Positions 3,020 through 46,965 of a stretch of DNA of 64,000 bases are shown here, one piece after another. Location of the stretch: positions 124,001-188,000 of IMG/VR virus record IMGVR_UViG_3300037502_003770, one strand, 5' to 3'. The position numbers were made by a program, and so were the translations under genes. The number at the start of each line of letters is the position of its first letter. The stretch's first letter is position 1. The notes under the pieces are model-generated. The model made no database searches. It saw nothing but the letters and a program-made list of their open reading frames with translations, and was not told the origin of the DNA.

Positions 3020-4267
3020 ATGTTAACACAGACCCAATTTGAAGAGCAGTTCAGAAATTTAGTAGCTATCATAGATATAGCAAAAACTAAGTTTCCATCA
3101 TATATTAATAATCCTTTCAAATTAAATATAATTGATGGTTTATTAAGTTTATCTTTTTATAAAATTTCTTTTTCAAAAGAAAAGACAATCACCAAATTTT
3201 CTCAAAAGATAAATAAAACTTTAACAAAAAAAGTTGTTGAAGATACTATTGATGTTATAAAAACTGTTCCTATAAATAGTTTTATTCTTTCAGAAGAATT
3301 TCTTTCTTATTTAGATAATAATCTTTTAATAAAGACTTCTGAAAAAAGTAATAAACTTTACTTTTTTAAATCATTAAATGAAGTAAAGCTTAATGATATT
3401 GATTTTACTTTTGATGGTAAAATTCTTAAAAAGAATAAGACTGGCAGTCTTTCAGAAAGAAACAGAAAACTATTTCTTTTAAATTATTTTTATGCTACAT
3501 CGAGCAATAAAACAATAAATAAAAAATATCTTCTTTCAAAGACAGATATTTCTCATATTGAAAATATTGCTTACAGGAAGTATTTTAAAAACAGAAGTAA
3601 AATTGAAATAGAAGATTTTATTTCTGATACTCAAGTAAGAGTATTTCAATATATTTGTTATTTTGATATAACAAAAGCCAATTTTAAAGCTTTCTTTATT
3701 TTTGTAATGAAAAATATTATTAACAGTAATAATGTTAATGATTATAAGAAAGGGAACTTTAGGCAAGTTTCAATTGAAATAGAAAATGAACAAGGCGATT
3801 TTTCACAAAATACAGCTTTAAATTCTTTATCAAGTGAAACTTTTAATTCTGATTTTGATAGGAATTTTAGTAATTCTTCTCAAAAGAATAAAAGGATGTT
3901 TGATTTAATAATAAATTTACCTTTAAGTAACCAAAGTAGAATTATTCTTAGGTCAATATATAACGTAGCTTTAATTGGTAATACTTCTATTCAACAAGAA
4001 GATAAAAGGAAAAAAAATCAGTTCAAAATATCCGTAATGGATGAGTTAAGAAAAACATTTAGAAAAGATATTAGCGATGATTCATATCGTGTATATCTTA
4101 CTAATATGAATAAATATCTTAAACAAATAGGTATTATTGAACCTGATAAGGAAACCCAACATATTCTAAATGAATATAAAAATGGTGAACTTGATATTAA
4201 GATTGCTTATGAATATATGGAGAACAAAATCAAAAACAGTCTTATTTCAGAACCTTGCATTTCTTAA
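3020..4267 (+). CDS. phage sigma70-like RNA polymerase sigma factor
   Basis: Region-2-like HIENIAYRKY..IEDFISDTQVRVFQYICYFDITKANFKAFFIFVMKNII; region-4-like LPLSNQSRIILRSIY...ISDDSYRVYLTNMNKYLK. Confidence 0.65.
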   Translation: MLTQTQFEEQFRNLVAIIDIAKTKFPSYINNPFKLNIIDGLLSLSFYKISFSKEKTITKFSQKINKTLTKKVVEDTIDVIKTVPINSFILSEEFLSYLDNNLLIKTSEKSNKLYFFKSLNEVKLNDIDFTFDGKILKKNKTGSLSERNRKLFLLNYFYATSSNKTINKKYLLSKTDISHIENIAYRKYFKNRSKIEIEDFISDTQVRVFQYICYFDITKANFKAFFIFVMKNIINSNNVNDYKKGNFRQVSIEIENEQGDFSQNTALNSLSSETFNSDFDRNFSNSSQKNKRMFDLIINLPLSNQSRIILRSIYNVALIGNTSIQQEDKRKKNQFKISVMDELRKTFRKDISDDSYRVYLTNMNKYLKQIGIIEPDKETQHILNEYKNGELDIKIAYEYMENKIKNSLISEPCIS

Positions 4268-18164: not shown

Positions 18165-19410
18165 TAAATTATATAATATTTATATTAATAATTATTTTTT
18201 ACTATTTAATAATATACATTTAAATTAATGAAATTAATTCACAAAGGTTATAAATATAGAATCTACCCAAATAAAGAACAAACTGAATTGTTAAATAAAC
18301 ATTTTGGTTCTTGTAGATTTGTATTTAATTATTTCCTTAATTTAAAAATGAATACCTATAAACAAGAAAAGAAAAATCTAAATAATAATTATCTATCTTC
18401 ATTATTAACCCTTCTTAAAAAAGAACAGAATTATTCTTGGTTAAATGAAATTAATTCTCAAAGTTTGCAAGCTTCTTTAAAAAATGTTGACGTTGCTTAT
18501 GATAGGTTTTTTAAAAAGATAAGTCAATATCCAAAATTTAAAAGTAAAAATGATAAACAAAGTTTTAAAGTACCACAGTTTTTAACTATTGAAAATGATT
18601 TATTATATTTGCCTAAATTTAAGAAAGGAATTAAAATAAATATTCATAGAGATTTTAAAGGAAAGATTTTATATGGAACTGTATCAAAAACACCAACAGG
18701 TAAATATTATGTATCTATCACTTGTAAACAAGAATATATTCCTTTTGAAAAGACAGGTTCTATTATAGGAATTGATACTGGTATTAAAGATTTAGCTATC
18801 CTTTCAGATAAAACTGTTTATGAAAATAAAAAGGTTTTAAAGAAGAGGATAAAGAAAATAAAATATAAACAAAGGCAATTAAGTAAGAAAGTAAAAGGTA
18901 GCAAGAGTAGGATAAAACAAAGGAATAAACTTGCAATAGAACATGAGAAAGTAGTAAATATTAGAAAAGATTATTTACATAAAGTAAGTACAGAAATTAT
19001 CAAAAACCACGATATTATATGTATTGAAGACCTTTCAATAAAAAACATGATGAAGAACCATAAATTAGCGCAAGCATTTTCTGATGCAAGTTTAGGTACA
19101 TTCTATGATATGTTAGAATATAAAGCTTCTTTTAATGAGAAGAAAATTATTAAGATAGGAAGATTTTTTGCAAGTAGTAAAACTTGTTCAAAATGTAATT
19201 ATATTAATGAGGAATTAACATTAAAGGATAGGGAATGGACTTGCAAAGGTTGTGGCACGTTGCATGATAGAGATTATAATGCAAGTATAAATATTAAAAA
19301 CGAAGGTTTAAAGATATTATCTGGTTTGGGTTGCAAGTCGGATATAAAACAAAAAGTGATGGAGGCGTTTCCGTTAGGAGAGTCAATGAAATCATATATT
19401 TAGAAATAAA
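18165..19410 (+). mobile_element. IS200/IS605-family element, solo TnpB (IS1341-like), boundaries approximate
   Basis: TnpB ORF without TnpA, interrupting a promoter-gene-terminator unit. Confidence 0.65.
18228..19403 (+). CDS. tnpB: RNA-guided endonuclease TnpB
   Basis: HTH_OrfB start YKYRIYPNKEQ..FGSCRFVFN; RuvC-I GIDTG, RuvC-II IEDL, zinc finger CSKC/CKGC, RuvC-III HDRDYNASINI. Confidence 0.95.
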   Translation: MKLIHKGYKYRIYPNKEQTELLNKHFGSCRFVFNYFLNLKMNTYKQEKKNLNNNYLSSLLTLLKKEQNYSWLNEINSQSLQASLKNVDVAYDRFFKKISQYPKFKSKNDKQSFKVPQFLTIENDLLYLPKFKKGIKINIHRDFKGKILYGTVSKTPTGKYYVSITCKQEYIPFEKTGSIIGIDTGIKDLAILSDKTVYENKKVLKKRIKKIKYKQRQLSKKVKGSKSRIKQRNKLAIEHEKVVNIRKDYLHKVSTEIIKNHDIICIEDLSIKNMMKNHKLAQAFSDASLGTFYDMLEYKASFNEKKIIKIGRFFASSKTCSKCNYINEELTLKDREWTCKGCGTLHDRDYNASINIKNEGLKILSGLGCKSDIKQKVMEAFPLGESMKSYI

Positions 19411-19812: not shown

Positions 19813-20136
19813 ATGAAAGAAAATCTTATTGAAAAAATATTTTCCCTTGAATGGAAAATACCTAAAAATAATTATGTATATCTTAATAAAGGAAATTTTC
19901 GTTCAAACAAATATTCACTAAATGCAATAAAAATAGAAAATAAAGAAATACTCATACACTATAAAAATAAATATTATGATATATATTTTTATGATGAAGT
20001 AACAACATTAGAAAAAAAGAATGTTCTTAAATCTTTATCTATTTTAGATTTACAATTTATTTTTCTATTTCTAAATTCAGAAAAAAATCAAAAACCTATT
20101 AATATGAAATTAAATTTTGATTCCATACCTAGATAA
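19813..20136 (+). CDS. LLDLQ-family paralogue
   Basis: MKENLIEKIF ... LSILDLQFIF. Confidence 0.8.
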   Translation: MKENLIEKIFSLEWKIPKNNYVYLNKGNFRSNKYSLNAIKIENKEILIHYKNKYYDIYFYDEVTTLEKKNVLKSLSILDLQFIFLFLNSEKNQKPINMKLNFDSIPR

Positions 20137-20147
20137 AATATATTCTT

Positions 20148-20453
20148 ATGAAAGAAAAATTAATTCAAGAAATATTGAATCTTGTTAAAAATACAAGAAA
20201 AGATTTTATTAACGATATTACTAACCCTTTTATCACTAATATCTATTATATAGACCCTGTATATGGCACTCGTAAAATATATTTAATGGATATAGTTGAT
20301 ATAGATATATACCAAATTATTACTGTAAAAAATTTAAATCTAGGTGATGATTATCGTAGTATAATTAATAAAACAGAAATAATAAGAATATTAAACCTTG
20401 TTTCATTATTAGACCTGCAATATATTCTATTATTATTAAAAAAATTTTTATGA
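20148..20453 (+). CDS. LLDLQ-family paralogue
   Basis: MKEKLIQEIL ... VSLLDLQYIL. Confidence 0.8.
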   Translation: MKEKLIQEILNLVKNTRKDFINDITNPFITNIYYIDPVYGTRKIYLMDIVDIDIYQIITVKNLNLGDDYRSIINKTEIIRILNLVSLLDLQYILLLLKKFL

Positions 20454-20752
20454 AAGAAATACTCCTTAAAGAAATAACCTCACTCCTTAAAGAAAAAGAT
20501 TTTACTTTAAAAAGTAACAATTATTATACTATTAATCTAAACCTTAAAAAAATACAAAATAAAGAATATTATTATTTCCTAAGAAATATACATTATAATA
20601 AAAATAATAATTCCTATATTCTAACATACAGTTTTAAAAATCAAACTCATCTAACAGATGATTATATCACACTTAAAAATAAAAATATAACCAAATATAT
20701 AAAACATATTTCCCTTCTTGATTTGCAATTTATAAAATTATCTCTTTTATGA
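20450..20752 (+). CDS. LLDLQ-family paralogue
   Basis: MKEILLKEIT ... ISLLDLQFIK. Confidence 0.8.
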   Translation: MKEILLKEITSLLKEKDFTLKSNNYYTINLNLKKIQNKEYYYFLRNIHYNKNNNSYILTYSFKNQTHLTDDYITLKNKNITKYIKHISLLDLQFIKLSLL

Positions 20753-20982
20753 AAGAAAAACTTATTCAAGAAATAAAAGATATTATTGAAAAATATGACC
20801 TTCATTATATGACAATATATACAGATATATATAAATTATCAAACCATATAAAAACTAATCGTACTCTAATGAAAGAAGTTTTCCTTTCTGATTTAAAAGA
20901 ATTTAACTTACTTGAATTGCAATTTACTTCTATAAAAATAAAAAATGATGCAAATAAACAAAGAAAAAATATCTTTTCTTAA
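20749..20982 (+). CDS. LLDLQ-family paralogue (short insert)
   Basis: MKEKLIQEIK ... FNLLELQFTS. Confidence 0.8.
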   Translation: MKEKLIQEIKDIIEKYDLHYMTIYTDIYKLSNHIKTNRTLMKEVFLSDLKEFNLLELQFTSIKIKNDANKQRKNIFS

Positions 20983-21295
20983 AGAAAAATCTTTACTTAA
21001 ATTTAAAAACCTTTTGGAATCACATAATAATTATGAAAATATCCTTAATTTTAGATATTATGTAAAACAAAAACATGGAGAAATTATAGGATATCCAAAA
21101 CCAATTTTAATAAATAATTATTATACTATACTTGAACTAAGAAAAAAACATTATACCTTATATACCCTACTTTATAAAACCACAAAAGAAAATAAATATA
21201 TATTCAAAGATTATAACCTTAATAAAATTATGAAAATATTTAAAAATATATCACTTCTTGACCTCCAATTTATTCTAATTCATATCAAAAAATAA
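20945..21295 (+). CDS. LLDLQ-family paralogue
   Basis: ISLLDLQFILIHIK. Confidence 0.8.
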   Translation: MMQINKEKISFLKEKSLLKFKNLLESHNNYENILNFRYYVKQKHGEIIGYPKPILINNYYTILELRKKHYTLYTLLYKTTKENKYIFKDYNLNKIMKIFKNISLLDLQFILIHIKK

Positions 21296-21306
21296 AACTT
21301 AATTAT

Positions 21307-21651
21307 ATGGATATATCACTTCTTAAAGAAAACCTTTTTAATCAAATATATAACATACTTGAAAAACAAAAAGAATTAGAATTAACAACACCCAATATTT
21401 ATATAAAATTTTTAGATGCTCATTCTATACATAATAAAAACCTATACCTACTAAAACTAAAATATCTAAATTCAAATAAAAAATATGAACTCCATTATAA
21501 ATATGATTATGATGGTAGTAATTTAAACCATTATAGAGTAAATTATTTAACAATTCAAGGAAAAGATATTTTATTGAAATCTATATCCTTACTTGACTTG
21601 CAATTTATTCTAATTCATATCAAAAACCGCTCACAATCAATTCAAATTTAA
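21307..21651 (+). CDS. LLDLQ-family paralogue
   Basis: LKENLFNQIY ... ISLLDLQFILIHIK. Confidence 0.8.
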   Translation: MDISLLKENLFNQIYNILEKQKELELTTPNIYIKFLDAHSIHNKNLYLLKLKYLNSNKKYELHYKYDYDGSNLNHYRVNYLTIQGKDILLKSISLLDLQFILIHIKNRSQSIQI

Positions 21652-21702
21652 AAAGGATATTCCACTACCAAAATATATTCTTCTCTTAAAATAACCATTT
21701 TT

Positions 21703-21981
21703 ATGAAAGAAAAAGATTTTATTAAAGAAAAACTCTTTAAACAAATAAAATACTATATTAAAAAATATCAACTTTGTTATATCCCATACACAGGTATTAA
21801 TGATTTACATAATATAAATAAAAACTCACCAACATATAAAATGTTTATTCATAATATAAATGAACTCCTTTCAAAAATAAAAACATTCCCACTATCAGAT
21901 TTAATCTTTCTAAAAAACCAAATTAAAAATGATGCACTCAAAAATAAAACAAAAACTAATAAATCAAATTCTTTCACCTAA
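21703..21981 (+). CDS. LLDLQ-family paralogue
   Basis: IKEKLFKQIK ... FPLSDLIFLK. Confidence 0.75.
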   Translation: MKEKDFIKEKLFKQIKYYIKKYQLCYIPYTGINDLHNINKNSPTYKMFIHNINELLSKIKTFPLSDLIFLKNQIKNDALKNKTKTNKSNSFT

Positions 21982-22345
21982 TAATAATCTAGTTGATAAT
22001 AAACATAATGTAGTAATAAGATATACCTCCGTTAATAACCCTAAACTCTATAATATAAAATTCTTTAATAAAGAAAAAACAACACATTACTCACTAAATG
22101 AACTCTCAATTAATAAACTCTTTATTAATACAAAAAAAATTAAAAGACATATAATAATTTATCAAAATAATTACCACCTTAAACCAATAACAATATCTCA
22201 TAAAAAATATATACACTCTTACCTAAACCTTATCCCACTACTTGACCTGCTCTTTATTAAAAATCTAATAATAAAAGAAAATAATAGAATAAAAAATTCT
22301 ATATTAAGAAATACTTTACTACTAGATAAACTTAAAAATGAATAA
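21929..22345 (+). CDS. LLDLQ-family paralogue
   Basis: IKQKLINQIL ... IPLLDLLFIK. Confidence 0.75.
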   Translation: MMHSKIKQKLINQILSPNNNLVDNKHNVVIRYTSVNNPKLYNIKFFNKEKTTHYSLNELSINKLFINTKKIKRHIIIYQNNYHLKPITISHKKYIHSYLNLIPLLDLLFIKNLIIKENNRIKNSILRNTLLLDKLKNE

Positions 22346-22595
22346 AATAACCTTTATTAAAAATACTCTTATTAAAGATATAAATAATTATAAAAATAAA
22401 TCACTTTCTCTTAATATAGAAAATTGTACATTTAAAATAAATAATACCTTATATAAATTAGAATTTTTTCAATATGGTGAAATATGTTATAGTACAAATG
22501 GTTGCTATACTTTCTTAAAAGATGATATTTTTTTATCTAAAATATCTTTACTCGACTTGCAATATATCCTTTTAAAAATGAAATCTTCTTTATGA
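22338..22595 (+). CDS. LLDLQ-family paralogue
   Basis: IKNTLIKDIN ... ISLLDLQYIL. Confidence 0.8.
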   Translation: MNKITFIKNTLIKDINNYKNKSLSLNIENCTFKINNTLYKLEFFQYGEICYSTNGCYTFLKDDIFLSKISLLDLQYILLKMKSSL

Positions 22596-22825
22596 AAGAA
22601 AAACTTGCCCTAAATATCCTACATACTATAAATCATTATAACCTTTTAAATAAAAAAATCCTTTATAATAATTTAATTTATGATTTTAAATCTTTTTATA
22701 CCATACTAGATTTTCAAGACCTACCCTTACTTGAACTACAATATTTGAAAATATTCCTTAAAACGATTGCAACCTATGGAAAAAATTACTCTTATTGGAA
22801 AAATTCTATCCCTTCTGAAAAATAA
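22592..22825 (+). CDS. LLDLQ-family paralogue (short insert)
   Basis: MKEKLALNIL ... LPLLELQYLK. Confidence 0.75.
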   Translation: MKEKLALNILHTINHYNLLNKKILYNNLIYDFKSFYTILDFQDLPLLELQYLKIFLKTIATYGKNYSYWKNSIPSEK

Positions 22826-23078
22826 AAACTTCTCACTAATAAAAAATAATAACCTAAAATTTATTTTAACTAATCAATATAATGGCTCATTATATTTCAT
22901 CTCTTATAATAATGTAAACAGTTATTATTATATACATTATTTTTACAATAATGACACCCATTTAACTACTGACTCTATTACAGAAAAAGAACTTTATTCA
23001 TACCTACTCTCTATGAATCTACTTGATATTCTCTTTATAAAATCTTATCTTATTAAAAATTCTATATATTACAGTTAG
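22767..23078 (+). CDS. LLDLQ-family paralogue (ATG at 22776 likely)
   Basis: EKITLIGKIL ... MNLLDILFIK. Confidence 0.75.
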   Translation: MQPMEKITLIGKILSLLKNKNFSLIKNNNLKFILTNQYNGSLYFISYNNVNSYYYIHYFYNNDTHLTTDSITEKELYSYLLSMNLLDILFIKSYLIKNSIYYS

Positions 23079-23083
23079 TAACC

Positions 23084-24035
23084 TAAAACATTTATAACAT
23101 TCTTTTAAATAAAACAATGTTTCCAAAACATAAATAGTTAAATATCAAAGAGTTATGAAAAATAATGGTATGTAATAATCACAAAGATTGTTTATTGAAA
23201 AGAATGTTTATACAAAACATTCTTTACTTAATAAAAAGAATCTTCTTAATAAAAACATTGTTCCTGATGAAAACATTGTTTTTTTTTAACAGCACTTTTT
23301 TTTAATAAAACATTCTTTCTAATAAAAACATTCTTCCCTTATATATTACATACATTGTATATAAAACATTGTTCTTAATAAGTAATATATTCTATTACAA
23401 TTACTTATATATAATAAAATAAACTTTTCTTGAATAAAAAGTTGTTTTTATATAGTACTTTTTTTATTGAAACCTATTTTTTCTATAGCACTTTTTTTCT
23501 TTTATATTATAGTTTTTATCTAAAAAAGGTTATTTTACTTGAAAACCTAATTTTTTCTACAGTACTTTTTCTTTAAAGAAGATACTTTTTTAATAAAAGT
23601 TGTTTTTTTCTATAGTACTTTTTTTCTTTTAAAAAAGATTATTTTACTTGAAAACCTAATTTTTTCTATAGTACTTTTTTTCTTTAAGTAAGGTTATTTC
23701 TTTCAGAAGGGAAGCTGTTTATCCCCTCGCCCATCGAGACACTCTAATTTTTTGAAATAAGTTTTCTTAAAGAAGACTTTTTTTCAAAAAACATATATTT
23801 CTTTAAGAAAACTTATTTTTTTATACAGCACTTTTTTTCAGAAAGTAAGTTTTTTATACAGCACTTTTTTTCTAAAACATATTCTTTTTTAAAGGGATAA
23901 ATTTTTCTTAGTAATTATTTCTTTTACAAAGGTAAAACTTTTTTCTTTAAAAACAAAATATTTCTTTAAAGTTTTATTTTTTCCTACAGCACTTTTTTTC
24001 TAAAAGTAAGTTTTTTTCTATAGTACTTTTTTTCT
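23084..24035 (+). repeat. non-coding iteron-like array
   Basis: About 9 AAA(C/G)A(T/A)T(G/C)TT boxes (23084-23375) and 10 A(C/T)AG(C/T)ACTTTTT boxes (23289, 23452, 23485, 23559, 23612, 23668, 23825, 23858, 23986, 24020); ~55 bp duplication 23522/23631. Confidence 0.8.
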
Positions 24036-24236
24036 TTTACAAAGATAGATATAATTTTTATATATACAAAATATTTCTTTAAAAAATTTCTTACCTTATA
24101 TATAGGTATGTTATACCGCTATGTTCCTGATGCCTGAAAAAAAACTTAAAAAACTTTAAGAAAAATTTGGTGGTATGAAAAATTGCCTTTATCTTTGCAG
24201 TAGATAAACAACCCAATAACCTTAACCGCTACTAAT

Positions 24237-24917
24237 ATGGCAAGTGAACTTAAAAGAGTACTGCACAAAGAAAGTAAAATTTTGTTTGTTGCAACCTATT
24301 CTGAGGATGCAGAAAGTCCTCGCACAATGTATGACAACTTATGCACTATGTTATGTTTTCATAATAGGTATAATTTAGGTGATACTGATTCACTTTTAAG
24401 AAAAAAAGGTTTCAACTATGATAGTGATGATTATGATAGTTGGGAAGAGATGGAGAAAGCTATCATAAAGGAGAATGATATTGCAATAATATTGCCTTTA
24501 TGGTTATACGACCACAGTGGATTAACAATTTCTTTTGGTAGAACTTGCAGCTGGGATAGTGGACAGGTAGGTTTTATACTTGTTGATAAAGCAACTATAA
24601 GAAAAGAATATAGTTGTAAGAGAATAAGTAAGAAACTTTTACTTAAAGTAGAAGAAATTCTAAAAAATGAAGTAAAAGAGTACGATTCATATTTAAGAGG
24701 TGATGTATATGACCTTAACCAATATACAATTTCTGATGAATATATGTCAGAAATAGAATCTGAAAATATCGATATTGATGAAATAGATATTGATATGTTA
24801 GAAGAGGTTGAATCTTGTTCCAATTATATTGGAGAAAGTTGGTTAGATGATGCTATAAATAATAGTATATCTTATCTAAATAAAAAATATCTTTCTCAAA
24901 AAGCTGAAACAATTTAA
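24237..24917 (+). CDS. conserved-looking phage hypothetical protein
   Basis: LPLWLYDHSGLTIS...WDSGQVGFI...YDSYLRGDVY; promoter at 24166-24197. Confidence 0.8.
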   Translation: MASELKRVLHKESKILFVATYSEDAESPRTMYDNLCTMLCFHNRYNLGDTDSLLRKKGFNYDSDDYDSWEEMEKAIIKENDIAIILPLWLYDHSGLTISFGRTCSWDSGQVGFILVDKATIRKEYSCKRISKKLLLKVEEILKNEVKEYDSYLRGDVYDLNQYTISDEYMSEIESENIDIDEIDIDMLEEVESCSNYIGESWLDDAINNSISYLNKKYLSQKAETI

Positions 24918-27984: not shown

Positions 27985-28510
27985 GAAAAAAAGTGCTGTT
28001 GAAAAAAATAGAATTTTATTAAATAAAACAATCTTTTTAATAAAACATTGTCTCAAATAAAAGAATCTTTATCTTAAAAGAATGTTTTTATAAAGAATGT
28101 TTATATATTTTAAGAGAAAATCTTCTTTTATTAGAAAAAAGTACCGTTGTAAATGGAGTTTCTTTTAGAAACTACAATACAAAAAGTATAATATTCAAAA
28201 AAAGTGCTGTACTAAAAATAGAATTTTACTTAAAAAGATACCAATTTTCAAAAAAAGTGCTATACAAAAAGTATAATTATATCATAATGTATGTATATAT
28301 TTTAATAAAAAAGAGTTTTATTAAAAAAAAGTACAGTACTAAAAATAGAAAATTCTTATATAATGGAATATTTTGCTATACAAAAAGTGTAAAATTAAAA
28401 AAAGTACTGTAGTATTTTTTACTTTTAAAGAATTTTAGTCCAATATAAGAGAAAAATTCCCTTATTAGAGAATAGTTTTTCTTTAATAAGAGAATTTTTT
28501 TGCTGTAGTA
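27985..28510 (-). repeat. second iteron-like array, inverted relative to the 23.3-24.0 kb array
   Basis: AAAAAAGT(G/A)C(T/C/A)(G/A)T at ~27987, 28135, 28198, 28251, 28325, 28398, plus AAA(C/G)A(A/T)T(C/G)T boxes at 28025-28102. Confidence 0.7.
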
Positions 28511-29352: not shown

Positions 29353-29570
29353 TTATTTCTTTAAGTAAAGCAGTTTTAAAGGTTCCTGATACTGCAAAGG
29401 TAGTTTGATACCTTTAAACTTTACAGTTGCTTAGATAGTCTTTCTAGTGGTTCCTGATACCCTAGAAAAAAAGTTTACTGAAAATTTGGATAACTCAAAG
29501 TAAGGTTATATCTTTGCAAGTGAATAGTAATAAAGCTATTCAATAACCTTAAACCTGATTCCCTTATGAA
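29353..29570 (+). repeat. upstream regulatory block duplicated at 31721-31943
   Basis: TTATTTCTTTAAGTAAAGCAGTTTTAAAGGTTCCTGAT, GGTTCCTGATACCCTAGAAAAAAAGTTTACTGAAAATTTGGATA and AAACCTGATTCCCTTATGAA are shared. Confidence 0.8.
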
Positions 29571-31461
29571 GTACCAACTTAACCCAAGATTAGATAGCTG
29601 CCAACTTAATGCAGTTAATACAGTTGCTCAAGCTACTGAAAATGAAGTTGTAAAAGTTGAGGCTGTTGCTGGTTCAGGCAAAACTACTACAATCATTGAA
29701 TCTATTAAGGAACTTGTAAATAGGGACTTAATACAATACAATAATAATGTATTGGTTCAGTTTAATAAAAATATTGCAACTGAAACAAAAGAGAAAATTA
29801 TGTTCAATAAATTAGATAAGTTTATTGATTGCAGAACTATTCATTCTGTATTTTTTCCTGCATTAAATGTAGTAAAAAAGTTCTTTGGAAAATTGCAAGT
29901 TAAATTAGTTGAGGATAATTTTAAAGCTACCTCAATTGTGAATAAGTATGTAGATGCTTATTGTGAAAATAATAATATTGATTCAGAAAAATCAATTGAA
30001 TTATTTAATCTTTCTGATATGTCAAGATTATTCGATTTAATCCGTTTATTTGCAATTACTGATTATTCAGATGTGGATGCAATTAACGAAATAATAGAAC
30101 GTTACAGTTTAAATATTTCACCGATTGCATTACAATTAATGCAAAATATCTTTGAACTGCAATATCCAAGTAGATATAAAGATATTGAAGTATTTACTAG
30201 TGGTGCTTTTAAATATAGTTTCTATTCACGTTCTGATAAAAAAACTGTAACCGTTTTTGAAAAGAACTTAAATAATAATATTCCTTATATGTATTTTGAT
30301 TTTACCGATATGCTTTATATTGCATATAAGTATTATTCAAGCTTACAAAACGAGCTACCTAGTTTTGAATACATATTTATAGATGAGGCTCAAGACTTAT
30401 CTAAATTGGATTATTGTTTAATTCAATTGATTAAACAAAAAAATTCAAAACTTATTTATGTTGGAGACCACCTGCAAGCTATTAATATGTTTAAAGGTGC
30501 TTTACCTGAATTGTATAAAAATTTCGATGCTACATACAATTGTGAATTAAATTACAATTACCGTAGTGGTTCCGAAATAATTCAGTATGTAAATGAAAAT
30601 ACAGTATGTAAAAATATTGTAAGTGGTTTAAATACTCAAGGTATAATTAATACCGATTATTTAACTACTTCTGAAAATAAAAACAAACTAATATCTTTTG
30701 TAAATGAATTAAAATCATTTTCCGAAGATAAAAGTAATAAAGAAAAACATTTAATACTTTCTGAAAAAAACGATATTTTAATTTCGTTGTATATTCAGTT
30801 AGCAAAAAATAATGTTTCTGATATTACTTTAAAAGGTGTAGCCGAATTATTAACAAGTTACAATACTTGTTTAAACTTTCAGAATGATAAAATGAAAGTA
30901 AAAGCAGTTAAAGATACTGATTCAATCGATACCGTTTTAAATGCAATACAATTGCAATTAAATATGAAAAGAAAAACTTTGCAGTCTTTGTATAATTTCG
31001 ATAATGAAAACGATTATCTAAAAGATACTGATTACTTCAATTTTAGTATCATTGAATATTTAGTAAAAGAACTTACTTCAATGAAGGAATATAATTCTGT
31101 AAAAGAATTAAGTTTGCAAGTAAATAAAATATTGAATAGTTATGATAGTGGTAAGCTTAGTAATAAAATTACCCTAATGACTGTTCATAAAGCCAAAGGT
31201 TTAGAAAGTGATATTGTAACTATCGTTAATTCAGATTTTAAACCTAAAGAAAAATTAAATAAAAATACAGGCAAACCTTATCCAATACCTAACTGGTTAG
31301 TTGAACAGTTTGAAAATTTAAAATATGTTGCTTTTACTCGTGCAGTAAAACAATTAAATATTTTAACATTGCCACAAACTGAAAATGAAAAAACAGGTTT
31401 TAAAAATAGTGGTAGGATGTATAAGGAAAATAACAAAGGTCAAACAGTAAGGAATTTTTAA
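29566..31461 (+). CDS. UvrD/Rep-like superfamily 1 helicase
   Basis: AVAGSGKTT, FNKNIA, RTIHS, DFTDML, FIDEAQD, VGDHLQAI, NYRS, TVHKAKGLE, YVAFTRA. Confidence 0.92.
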   Translation: MKYQLNPRLDSCQLNAVNTVAQATENEVVKVEAVAGSGKTTTIIESIKELVNRDLIQYNNNVLVQFNKNIATETKEKIMFNKLDKFIDCRTIHSVFFPALNVVKKFFGKLQVKLVEDNFKATSIVNKYVDAYCENNNIDSEKSIELFNLSDMSRLFDLIRLFAITDYSDVDAINEIIERYSLNISPIALQLMQNIFELQYPSRYKDIEVFTSGAFKYSFYSRSDKKTVTVFEKNLNNNIPYMYFDFTDMLYIAYKYYSSLQNELPSFEYIFIDEAQDLSKLDYCLIQLIKQKNSKLIYVGDHLQAINMFKGALPELYKNFDATYNCELNYNYRSGSEIIQYVNENTVCKNIVSGLNTQGIINTDYLTTSENKNKLISFVNELKSFSEDKSNKEKHLILSEKNDILISLYIQLAKNNVSDITLKGVAELLTSYNTCLNFQNDKMKVKAVKDTDSIDTVLNAIQLQLNMKRKTLQSLYNFDNENDYLKDTDYFNFSIIEYLVKELTSMKEYNSVKELSLQVNKILNSYDSGKLSNKITLMTVHKAKGLESDIVTIVNSDFKPKEKLNKNTGKPYPIPNWLVEQFENLKYVAFTRAVKQLNILTLPQTENEKTGFKNSGRMYKENNKGQTVRNF

Positions 31462-31938
31462 AATATCCTTACCTCAATATAAAACCTATCTTTTTTAAAG
31501 ATAGGTTTTTTTATATCCTTACTTTATCCTGATACCTACCTTAGTTCTCTATATAGTCTTATTAACGTTTTAAAGCCTCGTTAAGCTACTCTAAATACTA
31601 AATGATAGTTTGATACCTTTATACTATCCTGATGCCTTAAAGATACCTTTATGTAAGGAATAGAACTACCTACCTAGATAACCTTACTTAGTTGTGAAGT
31701 AGTAACCCTATATAAATAGCTTTATTTCTTTAAGTAAAGCAGTTTTAAAGGTTCCTGATTAGTGGTAAAGTAATTTACTATTAAAATAGCTTAGGTTCGC
31801 TTAGAGAGGCTTTATATAGGTTCCTGATACCCTAGAAAAAAAGTTTACTGAAAATTTGGATATATGAAAATAAAGTATTAACTTTGCAGTAGTTAAAGCA
31901 ATCAAGCTTTAATCATAACCAATAAACCTGATTCCCTT

Positions 31939-32124
31939 ATGAAAAATTTAATCTATGTAACTAATTTCCTGATAGGTGCTTTAACCTTATTATTACCTAT
32001 TACTTTATATCGTTTTGGTTTAGGAAATAATAATGCAATAATAGTAACTATTTTCTTACTGATTGAATTATTCTTATTAGTAAGATTAAATATTATATTC
32101 AGAAAATTAAATACAACTAAATAA
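31939..32124 (+). CDS. small two-TM membrane protein
   Basis: Hydrophobic 61 aa ORF after a promoter. Confidence 0.7.
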   Translation: MKNLIYVTNFLIGALTLLLPITLYRFGLGNNNAIIVTIFLLIELFLLVRLNIIFRKLNTTK

Positions 32125-32154
32125 ACCTATTCACTTAAAAACAATTTAATCCTT

Positions 32155-32325
32155 ATGGAAAAGACTTTCAGAAAATCAATTGCCTTAATAATTGATTCAT
32201 TATTGTATTTAATACTTTTATTAGTATTGAATTATTCAATTGAAAACATATTTCTTTTAATAGGAAGTGTTTTATTAGGAACATATATATATTTAATTCA
32301 TATAATTAAAAAATATCCTGATTGA
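32155..32325 (+). CDS. small two-TM membrane protein (56 aa, not in track)
   Basis: MEKTFRKSIALIIDSLLYLILLLVLNY...IKKYPD*. Confidence 0.6.
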   Translation: MEKTFRKSIALIIDSLLYLILLLVLNYSIENIFLLIGSVLLGTYIYLIHIIKKYPD

Positions 32326-32357
32326 ACGATGTCGCAAATAGTATTCTCATATATGGG

Positions 32358-32373
32358 AGTTCCACGTGGAACA
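32358..32373. promoter_or_regulatory. parS-like centromere site
   Basis: AGTTCCACGTGGAACA: perfect 14 bp palindrome, 15/16 match to the chromosomal parS form TGTTCCACGTGGAACA. Confidence 0.7.
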
Positions 32374-32376
32374 GTA

Positions 32377-32437
32377 GGGGTGGGGGTGGGTATCCCCTAG
32401 GGGGAGGGGAGGGGAGGTGGGGAGGACAGGGGTGGGG
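32377..32437 (+). other. G-rich tract with G-quadruplex potential
   Basis: Nine runs of 3 or more G in 61 nt, in an otherwise very AT-rich genome. Confidence 0.75.
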
Positions 32438-32483
32438 ACTACATCGAAACATTTTTTCCAAAAAAACAGAATTTTTCTAAGGA

Positions 32484-32624
32484 ACTTTTTTTTAAAGAAA
32501 ATAACCCTTTCTTAAAGGAAGAAATTGATTTACAGATACTTATGTTTTATTTAAAAGACTTTTTTTTAAAGAAAATAAGCTTTCTTTAAGAAAGAAATTG
32601 ATTTAGAGATAGTTATGTTTTATT
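32484..32624 (+). repeat. tandem imperfect repeat, period 74 bp, 2 copies
   Basis: ACTTTTTTTTAAAGAAAATAA...AAGAAATTGATTTA.AGATA.TTATGTTTTATT twice. Confidence 0.8.
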
Positions 32625-32836
32625 CTAAATAAATCTTTTTCAGAAGGTTATAAAATTTTAAGAAAACAGAATTTTTCTAAAGTACTTTTTCTTTACAAGA
32701 ATATTCTTTATGTGTAGATTTTCTAATAGGGGAAGGGGGGGGGTATTTTTATGAGTGGTCAATAAAATTTTTTTGTGGAAAAATTATGATTTTATAAAGA
32801 GAGCTATTTATTTAGAAAGGCGAATAATATTTAAAG

Positions 32837-34345
32837 ATGAGAGATATTAAGAACATTGATAAGCTGAGTGATAATAATCATAAGATAGATATTTTATCTT
32901 TAAATAAATTTTTAATTGAGAGGGGAGATAATTTTTTAGAAACTATTATTACAAACAATTATACCTTTATTAAGAGGGAAGATATTACAAAAGAATTTTT
33001 TCAATTAAATTATAAAAAGATTTTTCATGGTGAAAGTATTGATGATTTGGATTTTCTTGGTAAAGATTTTCCTATTGAGTGGTATAATGTGGATATTTTT
33101 AAATATATTCTTGATACATATTTTATTTTATTTCCAGCTTTTAAAACAATAAAATTATTTCCAAAGGAGATATTCTATATTTATAATTATTGCGAATTAT
33201 TTATTAAATATAATACAGTATTTTTAGAATATATACCAAAAGATATTGAGAATTATTATGAACTTGTTAAACAAGCTTTTATCAAATATGATGAGATAAT
33301 ATGGAAAAATTGGTTTCCAAAGGAATATATTCCTCAATTAAGAAAAGACTTTCCTGATAATTTAACTGTTAAAGCTTATATTCAATTAAAAAATTTATCA
33401 GAAAATAAAAATTCTTTATTAAGGGAAGATTATCGTTATGTATTAACTAATAGTGATGTATATCTTACTAAGAAGATAGAAGCTGTAAGTGATAAAAATA
33501 AGTTTGATGCTATTGCTTTTGATAAGTATTTACTTTCTTTTGGAAATAATGATTTACACAAGATATTATTTAATAAAAGGTATATTATTCCTAGTAAGGA
33601 GAGATTTCAAAAAAATTACATGAATATTTTAAGAAAGAATAATACTGTTAAAAATATTCATGGTTATGATGATGAGAAATATGGTTATTTAAGTTCTTTA
33701 ATACCTAAAGAGTATTATACTAAAGAAATGGTAGATAAGATAGTTGAACATTTTGGTTTATTTACTGTGGTAAAAAAGAGTCTAATAAATCAAAATGTTG
33801 ATGGGTTTGCTAATTTGGTTAAGGAGTATATTACGAATAGGGCTGTTTATTCAATACTTGCCAACATTAATCCTTATATTGAGGGTTATTATGATTTATT
33901 TAAATATGCAATTGAGAAAAATCCTTTTTCGATTAAATATTTAAATACTGAATTTGATAGGTATGAAGAGCTTGCTTTATTTGCTGTTTCTATTAGTGCT
34001 GGTGTCTTATTTTATATACCAGAATATAAAAGAAGTTATTATGTTTGTTTAAAAGCTGTTTCTGAAAATGGTTTTTTAATAAAAAGAGTACCAGAAGATG
34101 TTGAAAACTATTATTCTTTAGTAAAAGTTGCTTATTTACAGAATAAAGATAGTATTAATGAAATTAATTTAAATCCTTATTATATTGATATGTTAAAAAA
34201 GGATTTTCCTGAAGACGAGGAGCTTCAAAAAAAGAAAGGTTTTGATGATGTATTTGATGACCCTTATAATTTTCTTAAAGAACATATTTCAAAACAGGTA
34301 AGAAAGTTATTAAAAGAAGCTATTTATAAGAAAGGAAATTTTTAA
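32837..34345 (+). CDS. two-module DUF4116-like repeat protein with L-x-E linker and C-terminal tag; putative internal head protein
   Basis: KIDILSLNKFLIERGD start, (I/V)PxD(I/V)ENYY repeats, linker LSENKNSLLRE, tail LKEHISKQVRKLLKE. Confidence 0.7.
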   Translation: MRDIKNIDKLSDNNHKIDILSLNKFLIERGDNFLETIITNNYTFIKREDITKEFFQLNYKKIFHGESIDDLDFLGKDFPIEWYNVDIFKYILDTYFILFPAFKTIKLFPKEIFYIYNYCELFIKYNTVFLEYIPKDIENYYELVKQAFIKYDEIIWKNWFPKEYIPQLRKDFPDNLTVKAYIQLKNLSENKNSLLREDYRYVLTNSDVYLTKKIEAVSDKNKFDAIAFDKYLLSFGNNDLHKILFNKRYIIPSKERFQKNYMNILRKNNTVKNIHGYDDEKYGYLSSLIPKEYYTKEMVDKIVEHFGLFTVVKKSLINQNVDGFANLVKEYITNRAVYSILANINPYIEGYYDLFKYAIEKNPFSIKYLNTEFDRYEELALFAVSISAGVLFYIPEYKRSYYVCLKAVSENGFLIKRVPEDVENYYSLVKVAYLQNKDSINEINLNPYYIDMLKKDFPEDEELQKKKGFDDVFDDPYNFLKEHISKQVRKLLKEAIYKKGNF

Positions 34346-45411: not shown

Positions 45412-46211
45412 TATTCAGGTTTATTAATATTATTTTTGATACTAAATAATTCTTGGTTATTAACACTATATTTATTAATAATTGAAGTTGGTGCTTTCAC
45501 TATTTGGAAATCTGATTTCTTAATAAGATAACCTCTTAAAACAACTTTAAATACTTTTACATAATATCTTTTTCCTTCAAGGTCATTTAATGTTCCATCG
45601 GAACTAACATCTTCAAGATTTAAAGGCATGTAATGACCGTTTACATTAATATATAATTGTCTTTCATTAAACTTATTTAAATAAAGTTCAACCATTTCAT
45701 TTACATCGGTTATAAAAGCTGATATTAATCTTATTTCATATTCAATATCTATTGGAGTTGGTTGAGTTATTTTATAATGAATATATGTTAACATATCATT
45801 TTCAATAACAGGCATTTTATAATAACTAAAAGCTTTTTTATTAGGAATATTAAATTTCTCTCCGTAGATAGTTCCTTTAAGAATATTGGTTCTTTCCATT
45901 GTTATAAATGGAGGAACAAGGTTTTTATTATCATCTTGCAAGTGCCAAGTTTTTTGAAATTCACCCCATCTTTCATTATTCATAAAAATTGTATCAACTT
46001 TAACTCTTTCATCATTTTCACTAAGAATTGATAATGATAAATCACCTTCATTTGTACAATTAAATACAGCAATATCCAAATCGGCAATATCAATACTTTG
46101 AGGTAAAAAAGTAGAGTTTTCATCTGTTTGATTTAACAGTTCTTCAACACGAACAATTCCAACATTTGTAGGGTATGTATTTCTTAAAGAAGTTTTTTTA
46201 GGTAGAGCCAT
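45411..46211 (-). CDS. tail completion / sheath terminator (T4 gp15-like)
   Basis: VPPFITMER and QPTPIDIEYEIRLISAFITDVNEMVE resemble gp15-family motifs; structural gene context. Confidence 0.55.
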   Translation of the reverse strand: MALPKKTSLRNTYPTNVGIVRVEELLNQTDENSTFLPQSIDIADLDIAVFNCTNEGDLSLSILSENDERVKVDTIFMNNERWGEFQKTWHLQDDNKNLVPPFITMERTNILKGTIYGEKFNIPNKKAFSYYKMPVIENDMLTYIHYKITQPTPIDIEYEIRLISAFITDVNEMVELYLNKFNERQLYINVNGHYMPLNLEDVSSDGTLNDLEGKRYYVKVFKVVLRGYLIKKSDFQIVKAPTSIINKYSVNNQELFSIKNNINKPE

Positions 46212-46965
46212 TTACTTTTCTTTTAAATAGTAATTCTTTTAAAAGTTTTTTTACCTCTCTTGAAATATATTCTCTTAAATTAAACTTCTCTTTTATTTGT
46301 TTTAATATCAAAGGGTCTTCTATATAGTAAATAAGGGTTTTATCATTAGAAACAACTATTTCCCAAAGGTGAAAATCTTGTAAATGTTTAGGTACATGAA
46401 ATATTGAATCAGAAAAACTTAAAACAGCTTTTTCACAAAGAGAGTAATCTATAATTTTTTTAGATACATATGGTAAACAACCATATTGAGACGTAACAGC
46501 TTTTTCACAAAGAGAGTAATAATTTTCAATATTATCAGGTACAAATTGTAAAGCTGTGCCATCTTGAGAAATAGCTTTCTCGCAAAGAGAATAATCTCTT
46601 AATTCTTCTGGCACAAATTCTAAAGCTGTTCCATTTGTAAAAACAGCTTTCTCACAAATAGAATAATCTCTTAAATGTTTAGATACAAATTCTAAAATCC
46701 AACCATTTTTAGAAACAGCTTTTTCACGAAAAGAATATATATTCCATAATTCTTTTGGTATACGTTTAATATCATCTTCTTCATTGCTGTATATTATACT
46801 TATATAATAATTTAGTAATCTTTTATTAGAAAGGTTTTTTTCTTTAAAACCATTTACTTGCAATAATATATCTATTAAATCATCTCCTTTCTCAAGTAAA
46901 AAATTATTTAAAGAAAGTAAATCTATTTTATGTTTATCACTTATATTTTCTAACTTATTATTCAT
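46198..46965 (-). CDS. DUF4116-like repeat protein with C-terminal tag
   Basis: 25 aa repeats VPEELRDYSLCEKAxxxGxALxF; tail LREYISREVKKLLKE. Confidence 0.8.
   Translation of the reverse strand: MNNKLENISDKHKIDLLSLNNFLLEKGDDLIDILLQVNGFKEKNLSNKRLLNYYISIIYSNEEDDIKRIPKELWNIYSFREKAVSKNGWILEFVSKHLRDYSICEKAVFTNGTALEFVPEELRDYSLCEKAISQDGTALQFVPDNIENYYSLCEKAVTSQYGCLPYVSKKIIDYSLCEKAVLSFSDSIFHVPKHLQDFHLWEIVVSNDKTLIYYIEDPLILKQIKEKFNLREYISREVKKLLKELLFKRKVNGST

What the first reader, a model, noticed from the sequence alone, without database searches (positions are those of the whole stretch)
32377..32743. Dense G-quadruplex-type tract abutting parS
GGGGTGGGGGTGGG-TATCCCCTA-GGGGGAGGGGAGGGGAGGTGGGGAGGACAGGGGTGGGG starts 3 bp after parS and has nine G-runs, enough for two G4 units. 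An internal CCCCTAGGGG palindrome could compete with G4 folding. A second tract GGGGAAGGGGGGGGG is at 32729. No terminator hairpin is evident between the upstream membrane genes and the tract, so transcription into it could make a G4-stabilised R-loop primer, as at mitochondrial CSB II. The SF1 helicase is 1 kb upstream.
Basis: partly seen in the sequence, partly recalled or inferred. Interest (0 to 1): 0.7.

Follow-up and report, generated by a model that had tools for sequence, protein, structure and literature searches.

The report
Phage parS site beside G-quadruplex tract
An uncultivated 313-kb, very AT-rich giant phage carries one conserved non-coding locus that joins a bacterial-type centromere site (parS) to the only G-quadruplex-prone stretch in its genome; it looks like a DNA replication or organisation site, but its function is not proven.

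Summary
A 61-nt tract with nine G-runs (32377-32437) starts 3 nt after a parS-type palindrome, and a second G-run lies at 32729-32743. These are the only two G4-prone loci in the 312,694-bp, 22% GC phage contig, far beyond chance. The tract is not an artefact: an independent assembler and two independent samples carry it, and three relatives' contigs break just before it. It belongs to a 511-bp intergenic locus: conserved leader, parS, G tract, 291-nt AT-rich spacer with local direct repeats, second G-run, conserved block. A host-type promoter-like module reads into it with no terminator between. The genome-wide minimum of cumulative third-codon GC skew, an origin-type signature, falls in the 147-157 kb interval holding this locus and a related 1-kb repeat array. 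A distant relative (G001) has the same design, but with the G-rich strand reversed and no skew switch nearby. My best reading (about 0.4) is a cis-acting genome-maintenance site: host ParB loading at parS beside an origin-type region, with the G/C islands acting regardless of strand.

The parts
23100..24100 (+). About 1 kb of non-coding repeat array. It holds 6 of the genome's 8 copies of the motif TTTYCTANRGNACTTTTT, plus 16-, 18-, 56- and 73-nt tandem units. It is a companion locus to the G-tract region.
   Evidence: A homologous array, inverted, lies upstream of the helicase in relative L275.
29566..31461 (+). UvrD/Rep-type SF1 helicase gene (631 aa).
   Evidence: PF00580 at 6.5e-26 and phrog_1967 at 1.4e-62. 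Syntenic in L119, L240 and L275.
31481..31509 (+). Intrinsic terminator after the helicase gene (13-bp stem followed by a T-run).
31820..31886 (+). Promoter-like module: GTTCCTGAT, then TTTG-N20-TAACTTTG (the Bacteroidota -33/-7 pattern). It faces the two small ORFs and the tract.
   Evidence: The same module stands before the helicase gene (29450-29516) and before the gene at 24237. There are 8 GTTCCTGAT copies in the genome, all on the + strand.
31939..32124 (+). 61-aa hydrophobic ORF.
   Evidence: Conserved in L240.
32155..32325 (+). 56-aa hydrophobic ORF directly upstream of the locus.
   Evidence: Conserved in L119, L240 and L275.
32317..32358 (+). Conserved non-coding leader (CCTGATTGAACGATGTYGCAAATAGTATTCTCATATATGGGA). 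It is about 98% identical across lineages whose adjacent 56-aa gene is visibly less conserved and whose helicase is 60% identical in protein.
   Evidence: Alignment A2.
32358..32373 (.). parS-type site AGTTCCACGTGGAACA. It matches the palindromic parS TGTTCCACGTGGAACA at 15 of 16 positions and has a perfect 14-bp core. It is unique in the genome.
32377..32437 (+). G tract 1: nine G-runs, 41 of 61 bases G, G4Hunter up to 2.96. It contains CCCCTAGGGG at 32394-32403.
   Evidence: Identical in L119. It carries small indels in run X2.
32438..32728 (+). AT-rich spacer (20% GC) with local direct repeats: two 73-nt units (32484-32629), each with a CTTTCTT(T)AAGRAAG dyad, and two copies of the shared motif at 32473-32490 and 32673-32690. 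It varies, with indels, between strains.
32729..32743 (+). G tract 2: GGGGAAGGGGGGGGG, the second of only two loci with G4Hunter 1.5 or more (2.12).
   Evidence: Present in L119, and in variant form in X2.
32692..32822 (+). 131-nt block identical to L119. It contains G tract 2 and the leader of the downstream gene.
32837..34345 (+). First gene of a run of DUF4116 genes (502 aa). Third-codon GC skew jumps to 0.59-0.76 here.

Best explanation
The tract is real. It is one module of a conserved, single-copy, non-coding genome-maintenance locus of an uncultivated jumbo phage, probably of a Bacteroidota host. The locus joins the phage's only host-type parS site, the genome's only two G4-prone G-run islands, and a 291-nt AT-rich spacer between them that carries local iteron-like repeats shared with a 1-kb repeat array 8 kb upstream. 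I infer that host ParB is loaded at the parS site, as phage phi29 does with Spo0J. I also infer that the G/C-run islands act in a strand-independent way, as stable GC or non-B-DNA boundaries or as protein-binding islands, framing the AT-rich repeat region. That region would lie in or beside the replication-origin zone, as parS sites lie beside oriC in bacterial chromosomes. Shown here: the presence, uniqueness, conservation and recurrence of the design in a distant relative; transcription-compatible polarity; and a strand-bias switch in this interval. Inferred only: ParB binding, G4 or R-loop formation, and origin activity.
For: Uniqueness and non-chance. Independent samples and assemblers. 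Conservation is stronger than in flanking genes. A 147-nt block (32334-32480) and a 131-nt block (32692-32822) are identical to L119, whose helicase gene is only 71% identical in DNA. The leader and the left half of parS are about 98% identical in L240, where the neighbouring 56-aa gene is visibly less conserved and the helicase is 60% identical in protein. The repeats in the spacer occur nowhere else except the array at 23.1-24.1 kb, and all 8 motif copies are on the + strand; that array is conserved in L275. The same design recurs in a distant relative, G001, which shares 41 ORFs at 24-47% identity. G001 has one perfect 16-bp parS, the record's only locus with |G4Hunter| of 1.5 or more directly beside it, and then AT-rich DNA with two local direct repeats. 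Strand bias: + strand genes have GC3 skew 0.015 left of the site and 0.269 right of it (z 8.9). - strand genes show the mirror image, 0.232 and -0.016 (z 4.4). The cumulative residual has its global minimum at 154.5 kb, and the best change point lies between gene centres 154,511 and 157,589. Homologous genes have different skew in G000 and G001, so the skew depends on position, not gene family. A precedent for a lytic phage using host ParB through host-type parS is phi29 (PMC2731898).
Against: No ParA and only a sub-threshold ParB_N hit were found in the phage, so any ParB would have to come from an unknown host. Polymerase B (17.8 kb) and DnaB (280.5 kb) are far from the locus. No initiator-like gene was recognised next to it. 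Only one relaxed DnaA box lies nearby. In G001 the strand-bias switch is at about 135 kb, 107 kb from its parS locus. Near the site GC3 skew differs strongly between gene clusters: the DUF4116 genes reach 0.39-0.76. The sharp step may therefore partly reflect that gene family, and the skew cannot separate this locus from the array at 147-148 kb. Across 119 parS 16-mers sampled in IMG/VR, G/C runs are not generally enriched nearby. No experiment has been done.
Confidence: 0.4

Rival explanations
1. Early transcription from the upstream promoter reads through parS into the G tract. The G-rich RNA and the displaced G-rich strand form a hybrid G4 or a stable R-loop that stops RNA polymerase, and the RNA 3' end primes leading-strand synthesis into the AT-rich repeat region. 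This is how CSB II in mitochondria and ColE1 RNA II work.
For: The G-rich strand is the non-template strand. A promoter-like module lies at 31855-31886 and no terminator lies before the tract. With G4 energies the RNA fold is -79.8 against -32.6 kcal/mol without them, and the competing DNA hairpin is no better than shuffles. An AT-rich repeat region lies directly downstream. The GC3-skew minimum falls in this interval. G-run length varies between strains, as at CSB II (PMC5027508, abstract listed).
Against: In G001 the G-rich strand is the template strand for the flanking genes, and its polarity relative to the AT-rich repeats is reversed. G001's skew switch is elsewhere. No RNase H was found in the phage. 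The 1-kb repeat array at 23.1-24.1 kb is an equally good or better origin candidate. No RNA-DNA junction data exist.
Confidence: 0.18
2. The tract is a transcriptional insulator between an early block (small ORFs and helicase, host-type promoters) and a late block (DUF4116 and tail or baseplate genes). It would stop early read-through by G4 or R-loop formation. On this view parS is a separate, adjacent element.
For: The early-type promoter modules lie only to the left. A baseplate-hub-like protein and large virion-type genes lie to the right. No classical terminator follows the 56-aa gene. A conserved 131-nt block precedes the downstream gene.
Against: The phage uses ordinary hairpin terminators elsewhere. 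This model does not explain the unique parS, the local iteron-like repeats or the second G-run. The design recurs in G001 with the opposite strand polarity, before a homing-endonuclease gene.
Confidence: 0.12
3. The locus is a packaging or DNA-end-related site: a pac or cos region, or a cluster of Chi-like G-rich motifs protecting an end from host exonuclease. Contigs of relatives would end there because molecules end there.
For: Three independent contigs of relatives stop within about 50 nt upstream of the tract. Several other IMG/VR contigs with parS plus G/C runs also end at the motif. One such parS lies beside terminase genes in L269.
Against: The three contigs stop at different positions: inside the palindrome in L240, 16 nt before it in L275, and 21 nt after the 56-aa stop codon in the third, for which no DNA was held. 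This fits assembly failure at a hard, length-variable G tract better than a defined end. Other assemblies read straight through. No pile-up of molecule ends was reported, although only contigs, not reads, were available. I did not look for a terminase gene.
Confidence: 0.1
4. The G tracts have no function. They would be a slippage-grown, G-rich, low-complexity insertion carried along next to a functional parS.
For: G-run lengths differ between strains. Phage parS sites in general have no G/C runs nearby.
Against: The tract is identical in L119 despite 8% divergence of the region and 29% divergence in the helicase gene. A genome with 12% G holds two such tracts, and only here. An analogous island sits beside the single parS of a relative sharing only 24-47% protein identity.
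Confidence: 0.1
5. The tract is a sequencing or assembly artefact, such as poly-G dark-cycle reads or a chimeric join.
For: G-rich junk is a known artefact of two-colour Illumina chemistry (my own knowledge). The site lies 11-60 bp from the exact centre of the contig.
Against: The tract is present in an independent assembler's unitig, in an unrelated 2025 sample and in an ENA scaffold from a third sample, with conserved synteny on both sides.
Confidence: 0.02

Closest known systems
Chromosomal or plasmid parS centromere (ParABS), and its use by lytic phage phi29 through host Spo0J/ParB
   Same: The site is a 16-bp palindrome of the tGTTNCACGTGAAACa type (15 of 16 here, 16 of 16 in relative G001). 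It is single-copy, intergenic and strongly conserved. In phi29 a virulent phage carries host-type parS sites without its own ParAB (PMC2731898).
   Different: phi29 has five sites and a spore-forming host. Here there is one site, welded to a G4-prone tract and to iteron-like repeats. The host and its ParB are unknown, and binding is untested.
Mitochondrial CSB II (hybrid G4 or R-loop termination and priming at OriH)
   Same: A G-run tract lies on the non-template strand downstream of a promoter in a compact genome, and the G-runs vary in length (PMC3488243, PMC4176368 and PMC5027508, from their abstracts listed).
   Different: This tract is much longer (nine runs) and sits beside parS and iterons. 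No primer ends are known, and the polarity is not conserved in the distant relative.
ColE1 RNA II origins and the RNA-based prophage origins next to parABS in mycobacteriophages (RedRock group)
   Same: Replication is primed by a transcript, and in the mycobacteriophages the RNA origin lies beside the partition cassette (PMC7157519).
   Different: Those phages encode their own ParA and ParB and are extrachromosomal prophages. Here I found no ParA, integrase, resolvase or RNase H. No structured RNA family matched.
Iteron-type origins with a second iteron cluster (P1 oriR/incA, F, RK2)
   Same: One repeat motif occurs at only two loci, always in one orientation: an array of 6 or more copies and a pair of copies 8 kb away. 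The context is AT-rich and parS is adjacent.
   Different: No Rep initiator gene was recognised. The repeat units are long (about 35-73 nt) and degenerate. The comparison with these plasmids rests on my own knowledge.
Yeast mitochondrial ori/rep elements (GC clusters A, B and C separated by AT stretches, transcription-primed)
   Same: GC islands bracket AT-rich spacers in a genome of about 20% GC, with a promoter reading in.
   Different: This is an unrelated lineage, and the resemblance is recalled from my own knowledge, not tested.

Membership tests
parS (ParB-binding centromere) | 16-bp inverted repeat matching tGTTNCACGTGAAACa | tested here: met
   AGTTCCACGTGGAACA matches TGTTCCACGTGGAACA at 15 of 16 positions and is the only such site in 312.7 kb. 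Relative G001 has the perfect 16-mer.
parS (ParB-binding centromere) | Bound by a cognate ParB (with an HTH domain and CTP clamp) | not testable with these tools
   The phage has only a sub-threshold ParB_N hit (20.5 bits against a cut-off of 26.3) in a 507-aa protein 154 kb away. The host ParB is unknown.
parS (ParB-binding centromere) | Partner ParA ATPase encoded with it | tested here: not met
   PF13614 gave only a weak hit, inside the DnaB-like gene. A host ParA cannot be excluded.
Canonical G-quadruplex motif | Four or more G-runs of 3 or more bases with loops of 1-7 nt | tested here: met
   32400-32437 matches the regular expression and the tract has nine runs in all. G4Hunter reaches 2.96.
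Canonical G-quadruplex motif | Folds in K+ (CD, melting, DMS protection) | not testable with these tools
   There is only an energy-model prediction for RNA: -79.8 against -32.6 kcal/mol.
R-loop or G4-primed origin (CSB II, ColE1 type) | Promoter upstream, G-rich non-template strand, no terminator between | tested here: met
   Promoter-like module at 31855-31886 and no terminator-like site up to 32377. The promoter itself is inferred from a consensus only.
R-loop or G4-primed origin (CSB II, ColE1 type) | RNA-to-DNA transition, or nascent strand starts at the tract | not testable with these tools
   Only assembled contigs of public runs were available.
R-loop or G4-primed origin (CSB II, ColE1 type) | Strand polarity conserved in relatives | tested here: not met
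   The tract in G001 is C-rich on the sense strand (G4Hunter -2.2), so its polarity relative to the AT-rich repeats is reversed.
Replication origin (any type) | Switch of strand compositional bias (minimum of cumulative skew) | tested here: inconclusive
   The global minimum of cumulative residual GC3 skew is at 154.5 kb, and + and - strand genes show mirror-image shifts. However, skew differs between gene clusters, the resolution covers 147-157 kb, and the switch in G001 is not at its parS.
Iteron-type origin | Array of direct repeats next to an initiator (Rep) gene, with DnaA boxes | tested here: inconclusive
   Repeats are present. No Rep-like family was found in the flanking genes. One relaxed DnaA box is nearby but there is no cluster.
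Intrinsic terminator | GC-rich hairpin followed by a T-run | tested here: not met
   No such site was found in 32326-32836. The tract's best hairpin is -8 kcal/mol, z -0.48.
Known structured RNA family | Rfam covariance-model match | tested here: not met
   No hit at gathering thresholds in the window, and none at E up to 5 in 31500-33000.

The most novel reading that the evidence does not exclude
The locus is a new kind of phage replication origin in which a host-type parS site is physically coupled to a G-quadruplex or R-loop element. Early host transcription would create a G4-stabilised R-loop that both primes DNA synthesis into the iteron-bearing AT-rich spacer and positions the origin through ParB. 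This would be a bacterial-virus counterpart of mitochondrial CSB II, present in a family of Bacteroidota jumbo phages.
Probability: 0.15. Interest if true: 0.8.

Novelty: new variant of a known kind. Interest (0 to 1): 0.55.

Why it matters
Origins and DNA-organising sites of jumbo phages are almost unknown, and none is described for this deep-branching, 22% GC lineage. If the locus works as proposed, it gives a compact, clonable candidate of about 500 bp for origin and centromere function in uncultivated phages. It would extend phi29-type use of host ParB to giant phages outside the Firmicutes. It would also be a natural bacterial system for testing whether G4 or R-loop structures act at replication or segregation sites. 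There is a practical point as well: the tract breaks short-read assemblies of this phage group, so contig ends there should not be read as genome ends.

Tried and rejected
1. Rfam found no RNA family in the window or the locus.
2. A DNA search of 50,697 phage records found no match.
3. Protein-seeded searches of IMG/VR with the helicase, the 502-aa protein and polymerase B, and of JGI metagenomes with the helicase, found no relatives. An exact search for the conserved leader in metagenome contigs also found nothing. Relatives came only from the protein-cluster database.
4. I tested whether G/C runs flank parS in phages generally. In 119 sampled parS 16-mers there is no enrichment. Only a subset of lineages shows it; there are 34 hits with two G4 runs within reach, many of them in GC-rich contigs where chance suffices.
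5. The 73-nt and 21-nt repeats are not genome-wide promoter motifs. They are local, apart from the shared motif in the array at 23.1-24.1 kb.
6. The strict Bacteroidota promoter pattern is not enriched genome-wide in this phage: 7 on the + strand against 6.3 in shuffles, and TAnnTTTG upstream of genes 31 against 25. It is strongly enriched in relative G001 (57 against 18.6). Host assignment for this phage is therefore indirect.
7. I found no DnaA-box cluster, and no integrase, resolvase, RNase H or family A DNA polymerase.
8. The hairpin-competition idea fails: the CCCC run gives no structure better than shuffles.
9. The 52-aa and 51-aa ORFs that overlap the tract were treated as spurious. They would need to read through the palindrome and the G-runs in a genome with 12% G.
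10. Read-level checks (molecule ends, coverage profile) could not be done. Only assembled contigs of the runs were served, and both read-laying runs were used.

Full report
**What the window is.** The window is bases 124,001-188,000 of a single 312,694-bp IMG/VR virus contig. The contig is classed linear, has no end repeats, and CheckV rates it 96% complete. It is 22.3% GC with 11.9% G. It encodes a family B DNA polymerase at 17.8 kb and a DnaB-like helicase at 280.5 kb. I found no integrase, resolvase, ParA, RNase H or family A polymerase. Most proteins have no family match. The region right of the finding holds many DUF4116 proteins and a baseplate-hub-like protein. This is an uncultivated jumbo phage.

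**Observation.**
- AGTTCCACGTGGAACA lies at 32358-32373, with a perfect 14-bp palindrome at 32359-32372.
- After GTA comes a 61-nt tract at 32377-32437 with nine G-runs and 41 G.
- CCCCTAGGGG is at 32394-32403, and GGGGAAGGGGGGGGG is at 32729-32743.
- The SF1 (UvrD-type) helicase gene ends 916 nt upstream.
- No terminator-like site lies between the two small hydrophobic ORFs (61 and 56 aa) and the tract.

**Not chance.** The whole contig has one canonical G4 motif and one G-rich 40-mer, both here. Only two loci reach G4Hunter 1.5 or more, namely the two tracts, at 2.96 and 2.12. Forty Markov-simulated genomes never exceeded 23 G or C per 61 nt, against 41 observed, and gave no G4 motif. The palindrome is also unique in the genome.

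**Not an artefact.** Logan's independent assembly of the probable source run has a 1,508-nt unitig covering 31833-33340 without any difference. A 247-nt unitig from an unrelated aquatic metagenome of 2025 covers 32239-32492 with 3 substitutions and small indels, including a 2-nt deletion in a G-run. An ENA scaffold from a third sample (L119) has the palindrome, the tract and their flanks letter for letter. Three other contigs of relatives stop just upstream of the tract at different positions. L240 stops inside the palindrome and L275 stops 16 nt before it. The third contig, for which no DNA was held, stops 21 nt after the 56-aa stop codon. I read this as assembly failure at a difficult, length-variable G tract rather than as a defined DNA end.

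**Anatomy of the locus.** A classical terminator (31481-31509) follows the helicase gene. Next comes a repeated intergenic module, GTTCCTGAT followed by TTTG-N20-TAACTTTG at 31855-31886, which fits the Bacteroidota -33/-7 promoter pattern. The same module precedes the helicase gene and the gene at 24237. All eight GTTCCTGAT copies in the genome are on the + strand. Transcription from this module would pass the two small ORFs and enter the 511-bp intergenic region 32326-32836. That region consists of:
- a conserved leader;
- parS;
- G tract 1;
- a 291-nt spacer of 20% GC;
- G tract 2;
- a conserved block up to the start of a 502-aa DUF4116 gene.

The spacer holds two 73-nt direct repeats, each with a CTTTCTT(T)AAGRAAG dyad. 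It also holds two copies of a motif, TTTYCTANRGNACTTTTT, 200 nt apart. That motif occurs eight times in the genome, always on the + strand: twice here and six times in a 1-kb non-coding repeat array at 23,100-24,100. A homologous array, inverted, stands upstream of the helicase gene in relative L275.

**Conservation.** Between this phage and L119 the helicase gene is 71% identical in DNA and the 32.1-34.9 kb segment is 92.5% identical. Even so, 32334-32480 (147 nt: leader, parS, tract and 43 nt beyond) and 32692-32822 (131 nt, with G tract 2) are identical. The AT-rich middle has substitutions and two large indels. In L240 the helicase is 60% identical in protein and the 56-aa gene is visibly less conserved. 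There the leader and the left half of parS are about 98% identical up to the contig end.

**A distant relative with the same design.** IMG/VR record G001 (219,817 bp, 28% GC, 56% complete) shares 41 ORFs with this phage at 24-47% identity, including the helicase and a DUF4116-like protein.
- It has one parS, the perfect TGTTCCACGTGGAACA.
- This is followed at once by an 80-nt tract of C5-C6 and G3-G5 runs, the only locus of that record with |G4Hunter| of 1.5 or more (score -2.2).
- AT-rich DNA follows, with two locally unique direct repeats, TCCAGAAAATTTTT, 91 nt apart.

The design of a single parS, the genome's only G4-prone island and an AT-rich repeat region is therefore older than the split of these two phages. 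In G001, however, the G-rich strand is the opposite one, relative both to the flanking genes and to the repeats.

In that sample G/C runs are not enriched beside it. A targeted scan found 34 contigs with two G4 runs next to the palindrome. Among them are several moderately AT-rich lineages, including a phi29-like phage whose parS is flanked by GAGGGGTGA repeats. The association belongs to some lineages and is not a rule.

**Strand bias.** I decomposed third-codon-position GC skew over 245 ORFs of 120 aa or more.

| Genes | Left of the site | Right of the site (to 260 kb) | z |
|---|---|---|---|
| + strand | 0.015 (113 genes) | 0.269 (44 genes) | 8.9 |
| - strand (coding strand) | 0.232 (9 genes, all positive) | -0.016 (35 genes) | 4.4 |

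This fits one coding-strand bias of about 0.12 plus a strand bias that flips from about -0.11 to about +0.14. The cumulative residual has its global minimum at the helicase gene (154.5 kb). The best change point lies between gene centres 154,511 and 157,589, which bracket the locus. This is the classical origin-type signature.

Three caveats apply.
- The DUF4116 genes just right of the site have extreme values (0.39-0.76), and other gene clusters also differ strongly.
- The data cannot separate this locus from the repeat array at 147-148 kb.
- G001 shows the same kind of flip, but at about 135 kb, 107 kb from its parS.

In favour of a positional rather than gene-family cause, genes homologous between the two phages have skew of about 0.3 in this phage's right arm and about 0 in G001.

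**Structure predictions.** As single-stranded DNA, the tract's best Watson-Crick fold is -8 kcal/mol, no better than shuffles (z -0.48; C-rich strand z -1.08). The internal CCCC run is therefore a weak competitor. With G4 energies, the RNA copy folds at -79.8 against -32.6 kcal/mol. These are model predictions only.

**Interpretation.** The tract is real, unique, conserved and part of a composite cis-acting locus. What is conserved over the largest distance is the parS site with an adjoining G/C-run island and an AT-rich repeat region, whichever strand is G-rich.

I therefore favour, at about 0.4, a genome-maintenance site. In this reading parS loads host ParB, as phi29 does with Spo0J (PMC2731898). 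The G/C islands frame an AT-rich, iteron-bearing region in or beside the origin zone and act in a strand-independent way, as GC or non-B-DNA boundaries or as protein-binding islands.

It is weakened by the reversed polarity and separate skew switch in G001 and by the competing repeat array, so I put it at about 0.18.

The remaining possibilities are an early/late transcription insulator (0.12), a packaging or DNA-end site (0.10) and a functionless slippage product next to parS (0.10). An artefact is essentially excluded (0.02).

**Comparison with known systems.** The palindrome meets the sequence definition of parS. ParB binding and a ParA partner are untested or absent in the phage. The tract meets the sequence definition of a G4 motif. 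It works like, but cannot be filed under, CSB II or ColE1-type primed origins: priming is untested and the polarity is not conserved. The two-locus repeat system recalls iteron origins with a second control cluster (P1, F; my own knowledge), but no Rep gene was recognised. RNA-based prophage origins beside parABS in mycobacteriophages (PMC7157519) are the nearest described phage analogue, though those phages encode their own ParAB. Two full-text searches of the paper library, one combining G-quadruplex with parS and ParB and one combining it with phage genomes or jumbo phages, showed no description of a G4 tract joined to parS among the listed papers.

**Verdict.**
- Observation: confirmed.
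- Interpretation: partly supported.
- Novelty: a new variant of known kinds (phage use of host-type parS; G-rich origin-associated elements).
- Interest: 0.55. It is a clean, testable, conserved non-coding element in a poorly known phage lineage, but every functional step is still inference.

Noticed in passing
window 32347-32408 (contig 156,347-156,408): The contig midpoint (156,347.5) lies 11 nt before the palindrome and 29 nt before the G tract. If the contig break were random, this would have a chance of about 2-4 in 10,000. The contig ends cut an ORF with a GSFNPLHNGH nucleotidyltransferase motif, and there is no terminal overlap. I have no explanation. An assembly or curation rotation, or a genome broken opposite this site, cannot be told apart.
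   Followed up: partly
window 23100-24100: A 1-kb non-coding array of tandem units (16, 18, 56 and 73 nt) holds 6 of the 8 genomic copies of TTTYCTANRGNACTTTTT and is flanked by two GTTCCTGAT promoter-like modules. It is conserved, inverted, in relative L275. It is an alternative or partner origin candidate.
   Followed up: partly
window 19813-23078: Seven tandem ORFs of about 100-138 aa on the + strand have strongly negative GC skew (bulk -0.25 to -0.47, third positions down to -0.70). This is unlike the rest of the genome.
   Followed up: no
window 18228-19403: A TnpB / IS605 OrfB-type gene (OrfB_IS605, Cas12f1-like TNB and HTH domains) sits inside the phage genome. Its GC3 skew is +0.42, unlike its neighbours.
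   Followed up: no
window 32837-58236 and 46198-46965: There is a large expansion of DUF4116-containing proteins (at least nine in the window, up to 1,659 aa). A DUF4116-like protein also lies 6 kb from the parS locus in relative G001.
   Followed up: partly
window 29382-29516, 31751-31886, 23260, 24123; contig 6184, 10730: A repeated intergenic module, GTTCCTGAT followed by TTTG-N20-TAnnTTTG, occurs eight times on the + strand only and is probably a host-type early promoter. The -7 motif is not enriched upstream of genes in this phage, but it is threefold enriched in relative G001. A sigma-factor-like protein (phrog_1740, weak) lies at window 3020-4267.
   Followed up: partly
G001 (L276-L286), about 135 kb: The distant relative shows the same mirror-image GC3-skew flip for + and - strand genes at about 135 kb. 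No conspicuous non-coding feature lies there, and the flip is far from its parS at 28,063.
   Followed up: partly
L264 (IMGVR_UViG_3300045988_110956), parS at 3717 and 7992: A phi29-like phage contig (Phi29 capsid and connector families) has two parS palindromes, one of them flanked on both sides by GAGGGGTGA-type repeats. Other IMG/VR phages use the same palindrome repeatedly just upstream of genes (L018, L058), where it looks like an operator.
   Followed up: partly
contig 309,832-311,355 (L001:772-2295): A 507-aa protein has a sub-threshold ParB_N-like segment (residues 245-312) and is followed by a NUDIX gene. It is the only ParB-fold candidate in the phage.
   Followed up: partly
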